Origin: Haplodiscus bocki
Taxonomy: Eukaryota
Assembly (NCBI GenBank): GCA_965655095.1
Contig: OZ296656.1
Coordinates: 67,332,001-67,396,000 of the forward strand
Length of the DNA stretch: 64,000 bases
Reading direction: 5' to 3'
This document shows positions 3,021 to 61,078 of the stretch, piece by piece. The notes under the pieces were generated by a model. It saw only the letters and a list, made by a program, of their open reading frames with translations. It was not told the origin of the DNA and searched no databases. A program made the translations under genes and the position numbers. Position 1 is the stretch's first letter. Every line of letters begins with the position of its first letter.

Positions 3021-6000
3021 ACTTTATTTCTTCTGACGTTAAAAACTAACATAGCTCCACCACATGTATTTTCCACAACCTTTTCCCGCATGCAATCATG
3101 AAAAACCACAGCCTAAAATGTTTTTGTATATTAGTTAGCAGCATTCTTGTTCGGACAAAAGTCCTGGTACTGAGTTTGACATGTACTTTAGTTTTTGATT
3201 CCACTGTGGTGCCCCAACTTACTTTCCGTCTGACCTTCTTTTATGCAGAAACTGGCTCCTACTGATAGAAATTTTGATAGCGATAGTAAAACTAATTTTA
3301 TCTCACACGTTTCTCACTAGTTTTTGAGAAAATGTTTTTGTTGAAATGTAACAATTTATTTATAGTTTCTACTAAATCACACGCACAGTAAAATTAAAAC
3401 AAGATATCCAAACAAACTTCTTTGAATACAATCGGAAAGATTCACAATTTTTCATCCAAATGGGCGAATTTTCATCAGCACTGGGGGTGTGTTGGTGTCT
3501 CAAAGACTGGAGTTTTTGAAAAAGAAAGAGCTTTCTCCTTATTCTGCATTTCGTCAACGAGAATCGGATTTTCAGCCATTGAACCTCTGACAAAATCGTG
3601 GAAACTTCAAGGAGAAAAAGGAAAATCTATGCCTGGTGACAAGAATGCGTCCTTGTTCAAGTCAGGGTCGTCCCAGTGAAACATAATATCCTCCACTGCG
3701 GACACCTGATACCAGCTTGTGTCCATGTCTTGTGAGCCTACTTTTGAGAGTACTTCATCCTGCGTCTCCATTGTCCATCCCTGGTTGCGAGAAATTGGAA
3801 CTCGTGATGGATGATTGTTCAAACCACCATGTCTTGAGACAACAACAAGCTGGGAGCTGCCACAGGAGTTTCTTGAGAACTTTTTGTCATTTCTTGGACA
3901 AAATCTGTCACAGTCAGAGTAACTGAATCTGGTCCAAAGTCGGGAGACCACACAAAACTGTCCTTGGAGACTGAGAAATTCCTGTTGCTCTACTAGAGAC
4001 TGAAGTGTATAAAATGAGAATGGAATTGAATTTTTGGTTAACTGTATCAACCAATGGGAAGTGCACAAGATTATAGAAGGCATGGGATAATTTTTGCCTC
4101 TTTTGGTTCAAGTTCGGGTGCGGATGATTGTGATTGGCGCACGAATTTCTGCAAAAAGTAATGGTTTTGCGGTTTCGTAGTCACAAATCGTTTCATTGAA
4201 AAAGCAATGTGTACCATCACCGCCAAACAACAAAATTTTGGTTTTTGTTCCTTAAAAGGAATCTTTCAAAACGTAGCAAAACGCTTGGCCTTGCTAACAT
4301 TCGTTTACGTAACATCTTGCATCATTTCCTTCCTTGTGTGGACATACACAAAATTTGCCGTCAAAAGAAACTTCCAGGACAATAGACATATCTGGAATTG
4401 ACTATTGAGCCAAAATTATTAAAAAGATAAATCCCTTAGCCAAACTTCAAGACTAACGATCTTGATTGTTTTTAGAGGGATTATTGAACAACTGACACGT
4501 GGACCCGCATTGGGGACATTGATGCTCGCTTCTGTCGGGAGATTGAAAAGTGTTTTTGAGCAGGCCAACTATACCCGATCACATTGCCTTCAAACAACAC
4601 AAATTCCCAATATTTGTAATACTGTAATAATGCTATTGTCATACCGCCAATCAAGGGTGATTATGCTGCAGATCGTAGCTGCTCTAAATTTTCTCAGATT
4701 TGTTTGCAAGGTAATATCAATTTTTGTAAAGGTGGTGAATTTTGCCGTCGTTAATTTTGAGTTTGTCAGTAAAAAATTATTACCGTGTAATTCCTTTTTT
4801 TGATGGACAAGACACAATATTTGTTGTTTCCAAAAAGATACGATAAAGAAATTATCTTTTTGGATGTTCATTGATATCTTAAAGGTGATGAACAAAGATC
4901 TATTCGTTTGTCTTTCCAGATTCAATCTCATTTTTCAGTTTCAGTAATGGATTTTGTAAGCACTTCGTGACCTTATCGAAGGTTTTTTGAAAAACACGCA
5001 AACTGTCAACCAAAGAATTAGGTTTTCTTTAGGAAATATTTACTAGTTCTTGGAGGATATAAGAGTGCTGTGATTTCAAATCGAAAAAATGGCACAATTT
5101 GATTGCAAAACACTGTTTGTTGGCGCCTTTCCCAACACCTATTATTCGAAGCTGGGACTAAGAGATGTCAAAATTTTTGGGGTAAATTTAAACTATCATC
5201 GTTAGTTCCTTCGAAAGTGTTCTCAGGTTTTTCTTCGTAAAACTAATACAATTTATAAGAACTGGGAAATTGCTTTTTGACAGACATCAGAGAGTTTTAG
5301 TCTGTAATATTTGCAAAATCAATTGCTCGGTGGTGTAGAAGCGATGCAAAGTAGATGGGAGTTTCATTTTCTAGCAACGCTAACACAGACAACGCTTTTT
5401 TTCCAACCTTTCAGATATATAAATATGTTTCTTGGATAAATAAATACGAATTTGTGGTTTAATGTGTAAAAACATCGGATTACGAGATGTAATTGCTGAT
5501 AAATACTGTCTTGCATGGCGTCATTCTATGCCTTCAACCTCCACAATACAGTAATTGTGCAAAATTTAATTTTCATTTCGTTCTATGGAAGTGTTCTTGA
5601 TTGAGAGTAGAGAGCAAATGAAAAAAGAAACAGAGTAAAATTAAACTTTTCAGACAAGTTGTCTCCTTATCAGGGGAACTTGTTTCTTTTGCAGAATTTC
5701 TCCAGACAAACTTTCGCCATGCAAAAAGAATTTGGCCCACTTGATTAAGTCCGTCAGGCACGCTGTCTGGGGTTGTCGATCCACTTCTTTCATATTCTCA
5801 GACAGTCTGTCACCATGAAAAGGAAACTTGTTCCATTTCACTTATATCCACACACAGGCTGTTTCAACCATTATCAAAAGTATTTTGAATGCGTATAGTC
5901 AGTTGTCAAAATAAAAGAAGTTGATCGACAGATCGTTCTATGCTTGGTCTTCTCTTTTGTATTTTTTATTTTCATATATGTTGAAAACTAGCAAAAAACT

Positions 6001-6249
6001 TTTTTTCTACAAAAAACTGTATGTTTGTATGTTTTCTTTTGCAATGCTAAAGTCAAGTTGGTACAAGCTTTACGCTCACTTCAGAATAACCTGTTAATTT
6101 GTCTTCACTCAAATGAATTTCCCAATCCGAAAGGAACGATTTATTTGCGGAAACTGTGGAACCCAAACTTCAAGAAGAAATTTGGTTCGGCACAAGAAAA
6201 CCTTTTCACTAATTGTTCCCATTTCTCTACTACCTTCCCCGATGATTTA

Positions 6250-6575
6250 AACTATCGTAAGGCGGAGAACTGCAGAGCCCTAAAACCTGTGGTTAAATCT
6301 AAGTTTAAACATTGTTACCACAAGTTCTCAGACGTTTACGCTTTACGTCAACATAAAAATACCCAACATAGCTTTCCTATCAAAACAGCAAGGGTTCAAC
6401 TTGAAGATATCCTCACTGAAAATGATGATTCCAATCTTGAAGAAGAGTTGCGCTCTCGTCAACATATCCTCGTATTTTCTGAAATCAAACCGATAAAACA
6501 CAAAATCTTCAATTATGCTTTAAAGAAGCAGGACGCAACAATAGTTGACGAAAAGCTTGATCCCTTCTTCAACAG
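6250..6575 (+). pseudogene. Degenerate C2H2 zinc finger plus adjacent segment resembling the N-terminus of a Polinton-type DNA polymerase ORF
   Basis: Within ORF 6025-6705: FKHCYHKFSDVYALRQHKNTQH (C..F.....L..H...H, first Cys lost), then LEEELRSRQHIL...KHKIFNYAL...IVDEKLDPFFN. Truncated afterwards. Confidence 0.5.
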
Positions 6576-8299
6576 CAAAAGCCTAATTCTTGATGTCCTC
6601 AGCATTAACAGAAAAAGCCAAGCCGTTAGAGGGAAAAACATTAGCATTCCGGTAGATATATGTTTGACTTACCTCGTGGGAAAAATACTGCAGTTTTTCA
6701 GGTAAACGTCGAGTGAATTTTTCCTCACACTCAATGTTCAAATTTGCAACAGTTTCATCACACCAGTTTTTTGCTATCAGCTATAGCGAAAGATTATATG
6801 AAACGTCTCGAACGTTTCTCAATAGATATAAAACAAGGTACAGTGCAGTTTTGTTCAATTGGAACATTTGGATCTTCAGATTGGTTTGCTGAGGTTGATG
6901 TTTTTGATATATCTTGGTCGCACAGACAACAAACGTTGAACATAAGTTCTATCATTTTGTAAGTCAAAATTTTACTGATAGAAGTAGAAAGTTGAAGCAA
7001 ATGTATGCAGCAGTAAAGCAGTTTCAAGTTTTGAAGGTTAATTTGGGTCAGTTTTGCCTTGGGAATCTGTAAAAAGGAGTAAAATACTAGCTCGTTACAG
7101 TGATTGCATTTATCATTTCTTTGGTTTACATTTCGACTTCGATTTTGTCCTTTGACTTCGAATTGTCTTCAGAATGGTGGTTAAAAATTGAAGAGGGTGT
7201 CGATTGAACAGCTTTGACAAATCTTCTTGATGCAGATGTAGATCTTGAACAGCGTCTTGATGGAGGTCTGTAAGAAAACTTGTAGTTTCTGAATTTTTCA
7301 AAAACTGTGGATTCAAGGAGTTCGATATAGAAAAGAAATGGTAACGGTTTATTGGTGGGAAAAACAATGGCAAAGAGATCCAGAATCTCTTCTTTTGCAA
7401 TTTTTAAGGTTTTCTGAGCTCTATGAACTTCTCTCTGGATTATTTTCTCTATTGCAATATCGATATAGGGAACAGAAAATACCACGTGGTCGTGAAATTG
7501 AACTTGGTCAAAAACTAGAAAATCGATTTCGCGAAAATCGAATCCTTGAATTCCAACTGTTGCTTGAAGCTCAATGTTACTTCAATAATGGTTTACAGCA
7601 TATGAATTAGGCTGCTCTTCCAGATGAATCCGGTTTGGTATTCTTTAAAATATCGATTGAAAAATTTTGCAGGCGATTCCGATCGAAAACACGAACTCCA
7701 TTTCTCTCTTTGCCTTCTCGCTGTTCTCGAAAACAATTGTAAGTAAAATGCTTTTTTTGAGAGTAAATGTAATTTTTCAGAGTTTGGGTTTTACTTTGTT
7801 TCTGGCGTACTTTGTTTGTGTTGAACTAAATTTAAGGTTTGGATCAGAAGTTTCAAAAGATAAATTTTGAGACGCCAGTTTAGATGTTACGTAAATAAAT
7901 TCCATCGAAAAAAAACAAGAGTACGAACTTTTTCATGCGTAGTGTCTTCAGAGTCAGCAAGTGTTTTCATTGTGTTAAAGGGAGAAAGGTTCCATAACGG
8001 TGGATGTATCTTTGATTTGCCTCGTAATTTCTTTCAGTTCCTTAGCTAAACCTTGAGTTAACATTTCATTCAGATTAAAGTTAATACTTGCAGCAGACTC
8101 ATTACACCAGCCTTTTCCAACTAAGTGATGAACTTTCAGAGCATACTGGTTTGCGTTATCAGTTGCTTTTTCCGTTAAAGATTGAACTCTAACTTGCGCG
8201 TAAATTGCAGTTTTTTATCAGAAAAAAGAATTTTCAAAGGCAGCTAAATAACCTACCAATTTGTTTTAAAACTGTCTTGGAGTCTTAAAAAGCAGCTTG

Positions 8300-47544: not shown

Positions 47545-47744
47545 NNNNNNNNNNNNNNNNNNNNNNNNNNNNNNNNNNNNNNNNNNNNNNNNNNNNNNNN
47601 NNNNNNNNNNNNNNNNNNNNNNNNNNNNNNNNNNNNNNNNNNNNNNNNNNNNNNNNNNNNNNNNNNNNNNNNNNNNNNNNNNNNNNNNNNNNNNNNNNNN
47701 NNNNNNNNNNNNNNNNNNNNNNNNNNNNNNNNNNNNNNNNNNNN
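47545..47744. other. Assembly gap (200 N)
   Basis: Run of n characters; round length typical of a scaffolding spacer. Confidence 0.99.
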
Positions 47745-55619: not shown

Positions 55620-55870
55620 AGTGTCTAAAAGACGAAAAAAATTTGTTCGATAGCGGGAATTGAACTTGTCACCTGCGGGTTCCAGACCGCGGTGACTCCC
55701 CAGACATGTATTTTACAAGACACCAAGGGCTTCGCAGACTTGAATTCCGTGCGTAATGAACAATTTCAGGATAAGAAGAAAAACGCCGATCACTGAATTG
55801 AATATTTTCCTTTCGAAAAACAACTTCGACAGAAAAGAAGTAGTCAGATAGAAAAATTTCACAAATAATT
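55620..55870. repeat. Interspersed repeat, copy 1 (homologous to 58510-58765)
   Basis: Shared blocks agt.tctaaaa, atagcggga, cgcggtgac.ccc, tttcagga, actgaattg.atattttcctttcgaaaaa. Confidence 0.8.
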
Positions 55871-58509
55871 TTTCTCAAGTAAATAGATTTTTTTTAATTT
55901 CGTGTTGTTTCCATTCAAGAAATTTTCTTGAATGAAACTCTAGGATTCCTTAGGAGAGTTTTTGCATGATTACGTAACTGATCAAAAAAACAAGAACCGC
56001 AGTCTCATTTTGACAATTTCCGTCAATGTGGCGGATAAAAAATTGGTCGAACAAACAACAAATCTTTTTTACACATAAACCAAACTTGACCAAAAACATC
56101 TCGATGGAAACCTTGTCCAAAGCATTCAAGCCGATTGCTTTAGAGATTCAGTTTGAAAATCGACAGACTAACAAAATTAATTGAACTTTCTGCATGTTCA
56201 GTTTATCAATTTTCCAATCTAAAGAACAGAGTCAAAAGTTTTGTTCCTTCGAAGAAACATTCAAAAAAAATTCACCGTCCATTGAGACCTTGATGAACAA
56301 ATGGAAAAAAAGTCATTTTTGCAGAGGTCGATTTGGAATATCAAGAGAATTCAACAATTATAAGACTTTTGACACATTCGGTCAATCAGGATTGCAAGTC
56401 CAATATGAAAGACAAATCTGATGATTCTGAGAAAAAAACCACCATCTGCATCAAATAGAAAGGTATCGATTGATACGTTGAAGGGAAACTGGGGGAGCTA
56501 GAGCTGAAGAAATATGGGATTGATTTTCGAGGCATGATTGGACCAACAGAACCATATGATATTTCTGGTCACTCAGAAATCCACTGAAAGGATGAACAGT
56601 AACATTGTTTGATTGACTAATGTAGCAAAAAAAGAAAAATAAAGATTGAAACCTTGAAAAAATAACTCAAAACGATGTTTTTGGAGAAAAACAAGTTTGA
56701 AAATCGAGTTCAGTTCAGATTATCAGATTGCAAGAATTTCTGGCCTTTCCAATTCTGAGATTTCAATGCAGCATGAGAGCTGATAGTGTCCTTACTCAAC
56801 TTTTCTTCAAAAAGAGGGAATTTTCGATTGCGACTTTCGGTGGAAAAAGTCGAGCCTGTAGTTATGGAGGTACATGAATTTAAAGGAAATGTTTCTTCGA
56901 TGTTCGGATTTTTCTTGGCACTCTCAGATCATCAGGGTTGCGACACAAGGAACGAAATCAATATTGATCAAAGCAAGTAGTCTAGCAAAAATCCTAAAAT
57001 TGAGGTTTTGCAACTAGAGTTCAAGTCAATAGTTATGGAGAACTAATAGTTGGAATTGTTTTCAAAAAGTTTGAAAATCATTAACATTTGTTTGGCGTTC
57101 CTGAAATAACAAAATTCCGAAATAAGAAACAAAATGTTTGCTTTTACCTGCCAAATTAACTTTTTAGCTGATGGTCCGTCATTTTAGATTATAGTGATGG
57201 AAATTAAGCAGGTGATTAGGGAGAAAATAAATTGTATATAATGATGAATCAAAACCAATAGTGGCATTTGGAAAGTTCAGACTATCACAACTCAATTTTC
57301 ACAAATAAAGGAACTCAAAAAGCAACTTCTAAGTCTAATGCTCCGCCGCAACTTTTAATTGTTCGATTGAGACCTTGACAACAAAATAGGACTGTAGTTT
57401 CAGGAAAAGTTGAGATTGAATATGGAGATGAATCAAAATTGTTAGCACATTAGGATTATTCGGACAATCAAAACTCTGAGTAAGGATCAAAACGATTTAT
57501 TACCTAATTGAGAATCTTTGCAAAGGTTTGAAACTTTTGATTGAGATCTTGCCGGAAGAAATTAGGCCTATATTTGCAAAGAAATATGAGATGGAATTTC
57601 GACCTAAGTCAACTAAAAATTTTTCGATTTCTGGGGGTGGCCGGACTTTGATGCGAAAAAGTAGTTGACTAAATTTTGAATCGAGTCTTTTTCCAAGTTT
57701 AAGTTTGCTGATTGTGACCCTCATGAAGGCAATCAAAATTGTAGTTACGAAGAAACACCATTTCGATAATCCGGCTCAATCGTTTTTATTGAAAATTTTC
57801 TGAAAACTTTGGACTATCAAGATTTTGATGCAAGTATCAATATCAACGGTTTTTCAATCAAAACATTCTCTACAGGAGTAAAACTTTCAATTGAGATTGT
57901 GATTGATGACTCAAACCAGGATTTGCTGAGGAAATTTAGTTTGAATTTTGAGATATATCAATTTTGATGACAGAATTTTCGGACTATGAGGGCTGTGACG
58001 CAAGACACAAAACCTCCAATTTTTCAAAGTAGTACTCTTGCACAGGTAGAAAGATTCTGATTGAGGTTTAAATGAGTGAAGTGAGCCTTGTATTCTTAGA
58101 AAAAATTGCAACATAGAGGAAATTGAAAAAAAAATTGCGCTTCTCGGTATTCCCTCAATATGGGGAAGAAAAGCATGCTGCAGTAGAAATATTTTTGAAG
58201 TCACATCGCATTTTCTAACCCCGGAGGTAAACTAGGGTAATGAGAAAAAGTTTATACGCAAAAACTGAAAAAAATTTCAAATTTTTTACATTTTTAGTTG
58301 ATTTGTTGACCGATTTATGAACGTTTAACGTTTTTCGGCTTTTTGGAAATTCAAAAAAAAGTTTGTCACTTTTCTGAAAAATGCCGTTTTTCTTCAGTTG
58401 TGTCGGAAACTGGATAAATTTCGAAAAAAAATACTCCATTTATCAAAAAACCCTAAATATTGTAGAAAAAACTTTGTTTTTTGGTATTGAAAAATAAGAA
58501 AATTTTTAC

Positions 58510-58765
58510 AAGTATCTAAAAACAAGTAAAAAAATATGGAGCATAGCGGGATGCGAACCCGCCTTTTTTGGCTTCCTAATCGCGGTGACACCCACTTATT
58601 TGTATTAATCAAGGTACTAACGGCTCTGCAATAACGTCTGCGCGTCATGGGCAGTTTCAGGAAAAGTAAAAAAAATGCAGACTACTGAATTGGATATTTT
58701 CCTTTCGAAAAATTTTTTTAAGGGAAAATAATAAAAATTAAAATGTGGTCGAAAAAAATTTCGAG
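58510..58765. repeat. Interspersed repeat, copy 2, with a tRNA T-arm/B-box-like hairpin on the minus strand
   Basis: Homology to 55620-55870. Minus strand reads GCGGG-TTCGCAT-CCCGC at 58546-58562. Confidence 0.8.
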
Positions 58766-59049
58766 TACCAGAATATTGATTTTTGTACTAATTTTGTTAA
58801 TGATTATTTTTTTAAAAAAAAGTTTGTTGTTATACTTAATGGCCAATATTTGAAATCTTTATACTACTTTGCAAAATGACTAAAACTGAAAATGTTAATC
58901 ACCCACCTTATTTGGAATTTTTCTTCAGTCAAAAATATTCTAATAATTGGATCAAACTTTTTCTACATTTTTTTTCGAAAATTGTGACTTCAAAAACATT
59001 GGGTTCTGAAAATTAATGAGTCGTTTTGCCACATTCCTTCTTTTGTACT

Positions 59050-61078
59050 ATGTGTGTACTGTGTTCAAATGTTAAGTAAACTATGGAACTTCTCCTCATT
59101 TCTTGAGAAATTGGGCTGGATTTCATCTAACTCCCCCCAGCTAACCCCCAGCATTCGGTACCCTAATTGTCAATCAGGACTGGCAGTTCGGCCAGAACAG
59201 AATTTAGGAGTAACCCAAGAAGTTAAAATTAATAACAAACAATTTTTTTTCAGCGCTGCAATCCTCCTTCTTGCTTTGGGCGCCTTGGCTGAAGAAACCA
59301 ATTGGTGCTCCTCTTCAAACACGCATTCACTCCCATTGAACCAAGCTGGTGTTCAGTTGCATGTCCTAGTACCAAAGGGCATTGTTTTCACCTGGGACAG
59401 TGTGCCATCAGGCAACCAAATGAACATAGAGGTCTCCGAACATATTTCCTTGTCTACCCAAAAAATTGCCGGAAATGTTACAATCACGCCGGAAATGGTT
59501 TTCGTGGTTGGTATTTCAATTTCATGGACGTTTGTGCTATCATATTGTAATTCGCCTTCTGTTCACGTGAGATTCCCCATGAAGTTCATTTCCGAAGTTT
59601 GCATTAATGAGGAGAACTGCATCCCTACCACGTGCGACCTTGGTTTTTTTTCGCTGGAATTTGGTGATTACAGCAAAGTCAGTGCTTCTAACAAAAACTT
59701 TTTCGAGGATAACGATTGTAAGCTGAAAAAACCAGCTTTTTGGGACCAATGGGTATCATATCATTTCAATTTCAATACTTCGGACGAAGAGTTCTACTAC
59801 ATTGATTCCGACAATGATGGATTAATTAACATTTTGGAGTATTATTCTAACGGGTCTACACCAGAACAAAGCACAGAAAGTGTCGGAGGATTACCTCCCT
59901 CAATGGCCACGATTGGATCGAACCCGTTGAATCCAGACTCAGATAGCGATCTCCTTCTGGATGGTTTCGAAGCCTTTTTTGGATTGTCCCCTATTGAAGC
60001 TGATGATAGTTCTGCAGATGCTGACAACGACAGTTTGACCAACTTGCAAGAGCAAATATTTGGATCTGATCCCTTTAATAAAGACAGTGATGGGGATGGA
60101 GTTACGGACGGCATTGAGGCTGAGGAACAAGGAACTTTCAAAGACTTTGCGATGATAAGACTAACGATTGGGGATCCAACTAGTTCTGAGAAATACATTT
60201 TGCATGCAGGGGATATTTCCCATCATTCTCCGGGTTTTGGCGTTGTTGGAAGCGGTACCTACAAGTTTGGAGCAGGCAGATATGCCATAACTGTCCAATG
60301 GGTGGCTTCGATCTATTCAACTCCTGATTATGATTACACTGCCGAGGTTTCAAAGGAAAGTGGAGAAGCGACAGTTATTATCGAAGATCCCAATAATATT
60401 TTGGGAACATTTTATGACAGTTATTTTGACCGCACTGTCGGTAAAGAAGCAACACTGATAGTTGAAGGCGAATGCTCAGACGAGGCATCGGATGAAATTT
60501 ATTGTATTGATACGTGTGAAGAATGTCAATCATCGCCTTTTCGAATATGGAACAGTTATCGTGATCGATGCCAACCGTATTCTAATATTAGCATTCCGGA
60601 TTCTTATTGCCCATGCACGAAATGCGAAAAATGGTACCAGGAGGAGCTGGCAGACCGTCATTGGCTAGAAGACCTGAACTCGGAGAGACCGTGTCCCTGC
60701 CAGGCAAGGTCCGATGGAAGCGGTTTGACAAGTGCAAACGAAATGAGCGAAATTAATTGGAGATATGACTGGGTTTGCCGACACAACTCGAAACCATCGT
60801 GCTCAGATTATCATCCCGGAGCTTTCGGGTGTATGAAAGCTGACTGGAAGTCTTACAGGCAACAGTGTTGTTACGACACGAGTCTGAATTGGATAACGTC
60901 TGCGTCTCCAGGCGCTGGAACACCTAACAAAGAAAATTTTCTGCCACTTCACGTCACCGAGGATGTTTTTCCCTTCAAATGGTGTTGTAAACAATGCAAA
61001 GATCAAAAGTACTGTGATTATTATCTTGGCCAAGAAGGTGTGCGTACTGGTCCAACCACCTGCAGCAATGATGCTTAA
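59050..61078 (+). CDS. Secreted protein: signal peptide, Cys-containing N-domain, 4 TSP3-like Ca2+-binding repeats, beta-rich domain, Cys linker, AMOP domain. Proposed exons 59050-59075 + 59254-61078 (616 aa).
   Basis: Only long stop-free frame in the window (674 codons). Hydrophobic AAILLLALGALA-EE follows a ttttttttcag acceptor. Repeats DSDNDGLINILEY, DSDSDLLLDGFE, DADNDSLTNLQEQ, DSDGDGVTDGIE (59804-60125). AMOP signature C..W...CPC...C..YHPGA..C...QQCCYD...GAGTP...H..EDV.P..WCC...C.YY...R...C (60623-61066). The first exon is inferred. Confidence 0.9.

What the first reader, a model, noticed from the sequence alone, without database searches (positions are those of the whole stretch)
59254..61078. 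Chimeric secreted protein: bacterial-style TSP3 Ca2+-binding repeats and an unnamed 'GDP..SE.Y...PDYDY' domain fused to an animal AMOP domain
Seen: four DxDxDGLxN/DxxE repeats with G.NP/G.DP linkers, then IRLTIGDPTSSEKYIL...SPGFGVVGSGTYKF...PDYDYTAEV, a Cys-rich linker, and a complete AMOP domain at the C-terminus, with no TM segment. Established: AMOP is known mainly from metazoan isthmin (TSP1+AMOP), SUSD2 and MUC4 (NIDO/AMOP/VWD). The Cys-free DxDxDG..D..E...G.DP repeat is the form typical of bacterial surface proteins rather than vertebrate thrombospondins. Inference: the GDP/PDYDY domain after such repeats resembles, from memory, modules in large PVC-group bacterial proteins and scattered marine invertebrates. 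The protein may therefore be a laterally acquired module fused to a host adhesion domain, for example a Ca-dependent mucus, adhesive or symbiont-interaction protein. The intron-free 1.8-kb exon, isolated among dead transposons, fits recent assembly or retroposition.
Basis: partly seen in the sequence, partly recalled or inferred. Interest (0 to 1): 0.75.

Follow-up and report, generated by a model that had tools for sequence, protein, structure and literature searches.

The report
Acoel adhesion-type gene shared with diatoms
This is one copy of a multi-copy acoel-worm gene for a calcium-binding surface protein whose core is also found, in the same order, in hydrozoans and diatoms, and partly in bacteria, so the gene probably spread by horizontal transfer and was not assembled here.

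Summary
The sequence features are real. An open 607-codon exon (59254-61078) encodes four Cys-free DxDxDG repeats, an unnamed ~110-residue beta domain, a Cys-rich linker and a complete AMOP domain. Pfam scores the AMOP at 32 bits, and the model matches human ISM1 at Z 11.7.

- **Host.** The genome is an acoel. The published Symsagittifera roscoffensis spliced leader occurs 1308 times in it.
- **Age and copy number.** The gene is neither isolated nor recent. The genome holds at least 12 paralogous loci, a likely orthologue exists in another genome, and Clytia and Hydractinia have full-length relatives.
- **The AMOP is not a host part joined locally.** The block Cys domain, repeats, beta domain, linker, AMOP is collinear with a protein of the diatom Amphora (39% over 497 residues). 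Entomoneis and Thalassiosira proteins also carry the beta domain followed by AMOP.

The repeats plus beta domain do match bacterial proteins, for example 38% over 223 residues to a Brocadiia MAG protein. The beta domain has 363 database hits and no Pfam or NCBIfam model.

Lateral transfer therefore remains likely, but of the whole block and long ago. This copy has lost one of the family's two membrane helices and has no visible start codon. No RNA data were available.

The parts
59244..59253 (+). Polypyrimidine tract plus AG, probably a 3' splice acceptor (cis or spliced-leader)
   Evidence: TTTCAG|CGCT is invariant in seven paralogues, while the sequence upstream carries indels that are not multiples of three.
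59254..61078 (+). Single long coding exon of 607 codons plus a TAA stop. It has no in-frame ATG before residue 56.
   Evidence: A neutral-drift simulation gives P(no stop) = 0.002. dN/dS is 0.44-0.48 against intact paralogues.
59255..59290 (+). Hydrophobic core and cleavage region of a signal peptide (AAILLLALGALA); the initiator Met is missing from this exon
   Evidence: It aligns with the complete signal peptides of P0008, P0014/L010 and Clytia P0134.
59303..59488 (+). N-terminal beta-rich domain found only in the animal members
   Evidence: An HMM built from A1 finds it only in the acoel/hydrozoan-type proteins. The model has pLDDT 71-78 here. The fold match to a putative bacterial adhesin (4qrk) is weak, Z 6.1.
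59489..59548 (+). Single hydrophobic segment, the remnant of a two-segment hydrophobic hairpin
   Evidence: Hydropathy 1.88. Relatives have about 40 extra residues holding a first hydrophobic segment and a basic loop; these are deleted here, in P0002 and in L008/L012. L002, which matches the query without a break at that point, probably lacks them too.
59546..59803 (+). Cys-containing domain (five Cys in this copy) that precedes the repeats; unnamed
   Evidence: Conserved in the animal members and in the diatom-type proteins P0158, P0321-P0323 and P0174. No Pfam match.
59804..60118 (+). Four Cys-free DxDxDG..E calcium-binding repeats of the bacterial TSP3 type. The extra Asp-rich segment (NPTDITDDGSSGA) that follows them in most relatives is deleted here.
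   Evidence: Together with the next domain they are collinear with the Brocadiia MAG protein P0074, 38% over 223 residues, E 1e-32.
60146..60472 (+). Unnamed all-beta 'GDPSGSHSERY...PDYDY' domain
   Evidence: 363 hits at E <= 1e-3 among 1.84 billion representatives. No Pfam or NCBIfam model. pLDDT is mostly 76-85 in the full-length model. Only generic beta-sandwich matches, Z <= 4.4.
60473..60607 (+). Cys-rich linker
   Evidence: Conserved Cys columns in A1. Also detected in the diatom-type proteins.
60608..61075 (+). AMOP domain
   Evidence: Pfam 32.2 bits. Profile against ISM1 9c6t, E 1.6e-10. Foldseek E 2.5e-5. VIA Z 11.7.
59050..59075 (+). Weak candidate for a 26-nt first exon (ATG...AA|GTAAAC) that would give MCVLCSNVN-AAILLL...
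   Evidence: The phase fits and it yields a plausible signal peptide. It is not conserved in the intact paralogue L005 or in the other copies. Hypothesis only.

Best explanation
The window holds one intact copy of a tandemly expanded acoel gene family. The family encodes extracellular, disulfide-rich, calcium-binding proteins of adhesion or matrix type.

The family plan is: signal peptide, small beta domain, two hydrophobic segments with a short basic loop between them (read as a membrane hairpin that would leave both ends outside the cell), Cys domain, TSP3-type repeats, an undescribed beta-sandwich domain, Cys-rich linker, AMOP.

Inferred mechanism, not tested: the Asp-rich repeats bind Ca2+ and stiffen into a stalk, the beta sandwich packs against them, and the stalk presents the AMOP domain as the binding surface.

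Inferred origin: the repeats plus beta sandwich are a bacterial-type unit. The larger block from the Cys domain to AMOP is shared with diatoms, and the full animal plan is shared with hydrozoans. The gene therefore most likely reached these lineages by old horizontal transfer of the whole block, followed by duplication in the acoel. It was not made by a recent local fusion.

The window copy belongs to a sub-lineage that lost the first membrane helix. That sub-lineage is kept intact in two genomes.
For: Host:
- The genome is an acoel. The published S. roscoffensis spliced leader (PMC9911081) matches 1308 times, and the reversed control matches 0 times.

Family:
- At least 12 loci, three of them full-length and open.
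- P0002 has its best match at this locus (85%), so it comes from another genome and shares the helix deletion.
- Clytia and Hydractinia proteins have the same plan.

Selection:
- dN/dS is 0.44-0.48.
- P(open frame under neutrality) is 0.002.
- Sister copies do carry stop codons.

Shared block:
- Window against Amphora P0158: 39% over 497 residues, E 2e-97.
- Entomoneis P0160 has TSP3, the middle domain and AMOP. Thalassiosira P0170 has the middle domain, AMOP and Lipase_3.

Bacterial unit:
- P0074 (Brocadiia MAG): 38% over 223 residues.
- Alphaproteobacteria MAG ORF on a 1.0-Mb contig, with FG-GAP, TSP3_bac, the middle domain and CHAP: 41% over 108 residues.
- About 115 of the top 150 hits are Cys-poor proteins without AMOP.

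Tree and identities:
- The animal-type clade has support 100/99.
- Twenty diatom-type rows fall on the other side.
- Acoel rows nest beside Clytia with support 100/98.
- An AU test rejects placing them outside the other animal rows, p = 0.021.
- Pairwise identities between acoel, hydrozoan and diatom proteins all lie between 31 and 51%.

AMOP homology.
Against: - No RNA evidence. The four runs that hold the locus are genomic DNA.
- No start codon was found for the C9-type copies, and no first exon is conserved within the 370-520 bp that the paralogues share upstream.
- The window copy lacks the first hydrophobic segment, a 13-residue acidic segment and 2 residues of the GDPSGSHSER motif. With only one hydrophobic segment left, the topology could be disturbed.
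- The AU-tested group was chosen after the tree had been seen.
- Calcium binding and adhesion are inferred from the domain types alone.
- The transfer direction is not resolved.
Confidence: 0.6

Rival explanations
1. Vertical inheritance. The block is an ancient eukaryotic or early animal gene that survived only in acoels, hydrozoans and diatoms after many losses. The bacterial proteins share only an old domain pair.
For: In the block tree the animal-type and diatom-type groups are separated by a supported branch. Identities of 31-51% are compatible with saturation. Many relatives are unnamed and could come from further phyla.
Against: Among named hits only two hydrozoans appear, although other animals' public proteins are presumably in the collection (my assumption, not checked). 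Animal-diatom identity (36-42%) equals the Clytia-Hydractinia identity (39%). Acoel rows nest inside the hydrozoan-containing clade. The coding region is a single exon.
Confidence: 0.2
2. A bacterial TSP3-plus-middle-domain module was acquired laterally and fused in this animal to a resident AMOP domain, recently or by retroposition.
For: The TSP3-plus-middle-domain unit is collinear with bacterial proteins. The gene is a single exon among repeats.
Against: The junction to AMOP, the Cys-rich linker and the upstream Cys domain are all present in diatom proteins. There are at least 12 paralogues with dS of about 0.3, and hydrozoans have homologues.
Confidence: 0.03
3. This particular copy is a non-functional, decaying duplicate, whatever the history of the family.
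For: No ATG before residue 56. The first hydrophobic segment is lost. Small deletions lie in conserved motifs, and two nearly conserved positions are changed (DNDG to DNDS, GTPD to GTPN). No RNA run holds the locus. Its two closest copies in this genome, L002 and L008/L012, are broken.
Against: The 607-codon frame is intact, with P = 0.002 under neutrality. dN/dS is below 0.5. P0002 from another genome shares the helix deletion and is intact. The acceptor site is invariant.
Confidence: 0.2

Closest known systems
Isthmin-1 / AMOP domain (PF03782; PDB 9c6t)
   Same: The C-terminal domain is a true AMOP. It shares the motifs CE.W, CPC, HPGA..C.R, QQCCY and GAGTP. Fold match: Z 11.7, rmsd 2.8 A, 26% identity.
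   Different: No TSR domain precedes it, and there is no NIDO, VWD or Sushi as in MUC4 and SUSD2. It is preceded instead by bacterial-type TSP3 repeats and an unnamed beta domain.
Bacterial TSP3-repeat surface proteins (PF18884). The bacterial relatives give partial, sub-threshold matches to the NCBIfam models for Myxococcus CglD and MtsD.
   Same: Cys-free DxDxDG repeats followed directly by the same beta domain. 38% identity over 223 residues to a Brocadiia MAG protein.
   Different: The bacterial proteins are Cys-poor and lack AMOP. They pair the unit with Beta_helix, FG-GAP, CHAP, CARDB, FlgD_ig or Binary_toxB domains.
Thrombospondin signature domain (type 3 repeats wrapped on a C-terminal lectin-like beta sandwich; from my own knowledge)
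   Same: Calcium-binding Asp-rich repeats followed at once by a beta sandwich in an extracellular protein.
   Different: No match to the metazoan TSP_3 or TSP_C models. The repeats contain no cysteines. The beta domain shows no specific fold relative.
Diatom proteins: Amphora coffeaeformis EP00977_P006893 (P0158) and Entomoneis sp. CCMP467 P023211 (P0160)
   Same: With Amphora: a collinear block of Cys domain, TSP3, beta domain, linker and AMOP, 39% identity over 497 residues. With Entomoneis: TSP3, beta domain and AMOP.
   Different: The diatom proteins have a signal peptide but neither the animal N-terminal domain nor the hydrophobic hairpin. Some carry added Lipase_3 or VanY domains.
Clytia hemisphaerica A0A7M5X9S0 ('AMOP domain-containing protein') and Hydractinia LOC130649072
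   Same: Same full architecture, including the N-terminal domain. Clytia also shows the two hydrophobic segments; the hydropathy scan found only one in Hydractinia. 37-44% identity.
   Different: Different phylum. In these proteins the signal peptide with its Met is continuous with the rest of the sequence.

Membership tests
AMOP domain (PF03782) | Score above the Pfam gathering threshold over the whole model | tested here: met
   32.2 bits against a cutoff of 25, profile positions 5-143 of 143, when 60623-61075 is scanned alone. Missed when the whole ORF is scanned. 12 of 20 family members match.
AMOP domain (PF03782) | Fold of the solved AMOP (ISM1, 9c6t) with the conserved cysteine framework | tested here: met
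   VIA Z 11.7, rmsd 2.8 A over 129 residues. Foldseek E 2.5e-5. The HMM alignment shows the shared CPC, C.R, CCY and final Cys motifs. Disulfide pairing itself was not tested.
Bacterial TSP3 repeat (PF18884) | Score above the gathering threshold | tested here: inconclusive
   The window scores 22.4 bits against 25, with 3 stretches. 15 of 20 relatives match at E <= 0.001. Collinear 38% match to a bacterial TSP3 protein.
Metazoan thrombospondin | TSP_3 repeats with cysteines plus the TSP_C lectin-like domain | tested here: not met
   No TSP_3, TSP_C, EGF or TSP_1 match in the window or in 20 relatives.
Isthmin family | TSR domain followed by AMOP | tested here: not met
   No TSP_1/TSR match.
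MUC4 / SUSD2 type | NIDO, VWD or Sushi next to AMOP | tested here: not met
   None detected.
Acoel/hydrozoan 'N-domain, hairpin, TSP3, beta, AMOP' family (unnamed) | Full-length collinear similarity, including the N-terminal domain and both hydrophobic segments | tested here: met
   83-36% identity to P0002-P0021 at high coverage. N-domain and Cys-domain HMMs hit. One of the two hydrophobic segments is deleted in this copy.
Calcium-binding function of the repeats | Measured Ca2+ binding | not testable with these tools
   Only the DxDxDG motifs are seen.

The most novel reading that the evidence does not exclude
An adhesion-type gene moved horizontally as a complete block between unrelated eukaryotes. 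It would have passed between diatom-like protists and animals, and then from a hydrozoan lineage into acoel worms, where it expanded to a dozen copies. Its calcium-repeat plus beta-sandwich core would come from bacteria. This would be a rare documented animal-to-animal transfer of an extracellular matrix gene. It would also show that AMOP is not an animal invention.
Probability: 0.35. Interest if true: 0.8.

Novelty: new variant of a known kind. Interest (0 to 1): 0.6.

Why it matters
AMOP is treated as an animal adhesion domain. Here it forms part of a block shared at about 39% identity by an acoel worm, hydrozoans and diatoms.

The other half of that block is a bacterial-type calcium-repeat unit that carries a beta domain with no Pfam or NCBIfam model, although it has hundreds of relatives.

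If the patchy distribution holds up once organism names are known, this gives a clean case for studying gene transfer between eukaryotes. It would also give a new, widely spread extracellular domain to define, and a candidate surface or adhesive protein in three groups of marine organisms that live on surfaces.

Tried and rejected
I could not get DNA, neighbours or sample names for the relatives, and could not compute dN/dS against P0002.
- **Expression.** The look-up of sequencing runs gave no RNA run. The four holders cover intergenic DNA and repeats as well, so they are genomic.
- **Middle domain folded alone.** With only the seven-paralogue alignment the model was poor (pLDDT 43.7), so I used the full-length model.
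- **The protein-atlas search** on residues 294-607 gave no usable hit.
- **Middle domain against solved structures.** Only generic beta-sandwich matches, Z <= 4.4. I name no fold family.
- **First taxon assignment.** I first took the genome for a hydrozoan because the named hits were Clytia and Hydractinia. I dropped this after the spliced-leader test.
- **Middle-domain-only FastTree** placed P0174 among the bacterial rows. The longer block tree places it with the diatom-type proteins, so I treat the first placement as noise.
- **Conserved first exon.** None found in the shared upstream 370-520 bp. The window-only candidate at 59050-59075 is not conserved.
- **Spliced leader as source of a start codon.** Joining the leader (as published it ends ...AAATAGA) to 59254 would not create an ATG.
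- **Link to the diatom 'GDPH domain'.** The source paper (PMC6745473) is not held. Left open.
- **Bacterial frequency.** The middle domain was not found in 400 other genomes sampled from the phylum of the Alphaproteobacteria MAG, so it is sporadic in bacteria too.
- **Literature.** Searches for AMOP with cnidarians, diatoms or Hydra found no paper on this family.
Full report
**Observation**

The window has one long open frame, 59054-61078 on the + strand.

From 59255 the 607 residues contain, in order (coordinates):
- The hydrophobic core of a signal peptide (AAILLLALGALA).
- A beta-rich N-terminal domain.
- A hydrophobic stretch, PEMVFVVGISISWTFVLSYC, at residues 79-98.
- A Cys-containing domain.
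- Four Cys-free repeats: DSDNDGLINILE, DSDSDLLLDGFE, DADNDSLTNLQE and DSDGDGVTDGIE.
- The FAMIRLTIGDPTSSEKY...PDYDYTAEV...ATLIVE domain.
- A Cys-rich linker.
- A C-terminal Cys-rich domain.

Pfam reports AMOP only when the C-terminal piece is scanned alone: 32.2 bits against a cutoff of 25, profile positions 5-143 of 143. Scans of the whole ORF miss it.

Three further results confirm AMOP:
- A profile of the family hits human Isthmin-1 (9c6t) at E 1.6e-10, with the shared motifs CPC, C.R, QQCCY and GAGTP.
- Foldseek gives E 2.5e-5 to 9c6t.
- VIA-align gives Z 11.7, rmsd 2.8 A over 129 residues, 26% identity.

TSP3_bac scores 22.4 bits in the window, just under its cutoff. It matches 15 of 20 relatives at E <= 0.001, and no metazoan TSP_3, TSP_C or TSR model matches.

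There is a hydrophobic segment, so 'no TM segment' does not hold.

**Which organism**

I first assumed a hydrozoan, because the only named relatives were Clytia hemisphaerica and Hydractinia symbiolongicarpus.

Earlier notes of this scan call the genome an acoel. I tested this. The spliced leader published for Symsagittifera roscoffensis (PMC9911081) occurs 1308 times in the window's genome with at most one mismatch. The reversed control occurs 0 times.

The genome is therefore S. roscoffensis or a very close relative.

**The family in this genome**

A six-frame search finds at least 12 loci. Most lie on the same 92.8-Mb contig between 65.8 and 68.7 Mb. One lies on another contig (C6) and some lie on small unplaced contigs.

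State of the copies:
- Three have long intact frames: the window, L004 and L005.
- Others carry one to seven stop codons or a frameshift.
- The C6 copy is cut short inside AMOP.

The gene is thus neither isolated nor new.

Evidence that the window copy is under selection:
- Against L004 and L005, dN is 0.13, dS is 0.28-0.30 and dN/dS is 0.44-0.48.
- If the window lineage had taken half of the 14.4% nucleotide divergence neutrally, only 0.2% of simulated copies keep the frame open.
- P0002 (615 residues, intact) has its best match in this genome at the window locus, at 85% identity. It therefore comes from another genome and is the likely orthologue.

**Peculiarities of this copy**

Most relatives have about 40 more residues after the N-terminal domain. 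These hold a first hydrophobic segment and a short basic loop (KSK or NNR), which lie before the segment that the window retains.

Hydropathy shows a signal peptide plus two hydrophobic segments in L004, L005, L010 and Clytia P0134. P0013 and P0016, which lack a scored signal peptide, also show the two segments. Some members, such as P0008 and Hydractinia P0312, show fewer at the threshold used. The window has only one.

I read the pair as a membrane hairpin that leaves both the N-terminal domain and the large C-terminal part outside the cell. This is an inference from sequence.

Other differences in the window copy:
- The first segment is missing in the window, P0002 and L008/L012. L002, which matches the query without a break at that point, probably lacks it too.
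- The window also lacks a 13-residue acidic segment (NPTDITDDGSSGA) after the fourth repeat.
- It lacks two residues of the GDPSGSHSER motif.

**The 5' end is unresolved**

No in-frame ATG precedes residue 56.

The acceptor TTTCAG|CGCT is invariant in seven paralogues. The sequence upstream of it has indels that are not multiples of three, so it is not coding.

Paralogue similarity ends 370-520 bp upstream, and no first exon is conserved there.

A window-only candidate at 59050-59075 has the donor GTAAAC. It would give MCVLCSNVN joined to AAILLL..., which is a plausible signal peptide. The intact copy L005 lacks it.

The C6 copy and the hydrozoan proteins have Met and signal peptide continuous with the rest.

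The four public runs that hold the locus also cover intergenic DNA and repeats, so they are genomic. No RNA evidence could be obtained.

**The middle domain**

A profile of this domain from the window and six paralogues (A2) was searched against 1.84 billion representative proteins. It gave 363 hits at E <= 1e-3 and 173 at E <= 1e-10.

The domain has no Pfam or NCBIfam model. In the full-length model it is all-beta with pLDDT mostly 76-85. It matches solved structures only as a generic beta sandwich, Z <= 4.4.

The hits fall into two classes.

*Class 1: long, Cys-poor proteins with many TSP3 motifs and no AMOP.* About 115 of the top 150 hits belong here. Examples:
- P0074 from a Brocadiia (Planctomycetota) MAG. 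It aligns collinearly with the window's repeats plus middle domain at 38% over 223 residues, E 1e-32.
- A Phycisphaerales MAG protein.
- An ORF on a 1.0-Mb contig of an Alphaproteobacteria MAG, with FG-GAP, TSP3_bac, the middle domain and CHAP. It is 41% identical over 108 residues.
- Proteins that pair the unit with Beta_helix, CARDB, FlgD_ig or Binary_toxB.

The domain is sporadic in bacteria. It was not found in 400 other genomes sampled from that phylum.

*Class 2: Cys-rich proteins that also carry AMOP.*

**The block is shared with diatoms**

Named diatom proteins in the second class:
- Entomoneis sp. CCMP467 (P0160): TSP3, middle domain, AMOP.
- Thalassiosira minuscula (P0170/P0300): middle domain, AMOP, Lipase_3.
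- Amphora coffeaeformis (P0158).

The window protein aligns with the Amphora protein at 39% identity over 497 residues, E 2e-97. The alignment runs without a break from the Cys domain before the repeats to the end of AMOP.

The AMOP, the linker and the upstream Cys domain therefore belong to the same inherited block as the bacterial-type unit. They were not joined in this animal.

The diatom proteins have a signal peptide but neither the N-terminal domain nor the hairpin. Those two parts are additions seen only in the acoel and hydrozoan members.

**Trees**

I built an IQ-TREE tree from the middle domain to the end of AMOP, with 46 sequences and 333 columns. It shows:
- The animal-type sequences form a clade with support 100/99.
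- Twenty diatom-type rows fall on the other side.
- An unnamed pair, P0021/P0178, lies next to the animal clade.
- The acoel rows sit beside Clytia with support 100/98, and Hydractinia lies further out.

An AU test rejects the tree that keeps the non-acoel animal rows together, p = 0.021.

Pairwise identities are flat:

| Comparison | Identity |
|---|---|
| Acoel - Clytia | 41-44% |
| Clytia - Hydractinia | 39% |
| Acoel - Amphora | 36-39% |
| Amphora - Entomoneis | 36% |

**Interpretation**

*Shown:*
- The domain anatomy.
- The acoel host.
- The paralogue family and the signs of selection on this copy.
- The bacterial occurrence of the repeat-plus-beta unit.
- The diatom and hydrozoan occurrence of the larger block.

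*Inferred:*
- The product is an extracellular calcium-binding protein of adhesion or matrix type.
- The patchy distribution reflects old horizontal transfer of the whole block, possibly including a hydrozoan-to-acoel step.

*Alternatives:*
- Vertical descent with many losses is not excluded, because most relatives are unnamed.
- Whether this particular copy still works is open. For function: the open frame, dN/dS, the intact likely orthologue and the conserved acceptor. Against: the missing start codon, the lost helix and the absence of RNA data.

**Limits**

- No AlphaFold DB or eukaryote-wide named database was available.

Noticed in passing
window 47545-47744: A run of 200 N, which is an assembly gap or masked stretch. 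Left untouched.
   Followed up: no
window 55697-56287, 57273-57469, 57667-57863, 58455-58848: Summed contig depth in the DNA runs is in the hundreds to thousands, against roughly 10-100 in most neighbouring bins. These are high-copy repeats directly upstream of the gene.
   Followed up: partly
G000:C9 65.8-68.7 Mb (loci L002-L009, L012), C6:54592391-54594175 (L010/L024), C1415, C3901, C4768: Paralogue cluster of the family. Several copies carry 1-7 stop codons or frameshifts. The C6 copy keeps its own ATG and signal peptide but is truncated inside AMOP.
   Followed up: partly
G000 genome-wide (e.g. L018-L020): The 31-nt S. roscoffensis spliced leader occurs 1308 times in the genome, far more than SL RNA genes alone would need. 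Earlier notes of this scan attribute this to leader-capped LINE copies.
   Followed up: no
P0174, P0323, P0170 (proteins, not in the window): Diatom-type members add an enzyme domain after AMOP: VanY D-Ala-D-Ala carboxypeptidase in P0174, and class 3 lipase in P0323 and P0170.
   Followed up: partly
window 59054-59253: The frame stays open for 67 codons upstream of the acceptor, and a gene caller used the ATG at 59069 (P0001, 669 aa). Paralogues have stop codons or frame-breaking indels here, so this stretch is probably not coding.
   Followed up: yes
window 3607-4083 (-) and 6025-6705 (+): These are the only other ORFs of 150 residues or more in the 64-kb window. Neither has a Pfam match.
   Followed up: partly
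P0021/P0151/P0178 (proteins): An unnamed group of about 456-residue proteins with TSP3, the middle domain and AMOP lies between the animal-type clade and the diatom-type group in the tree. Their organism is unknown and could matter for the direction of transfer.
   Followed up: no
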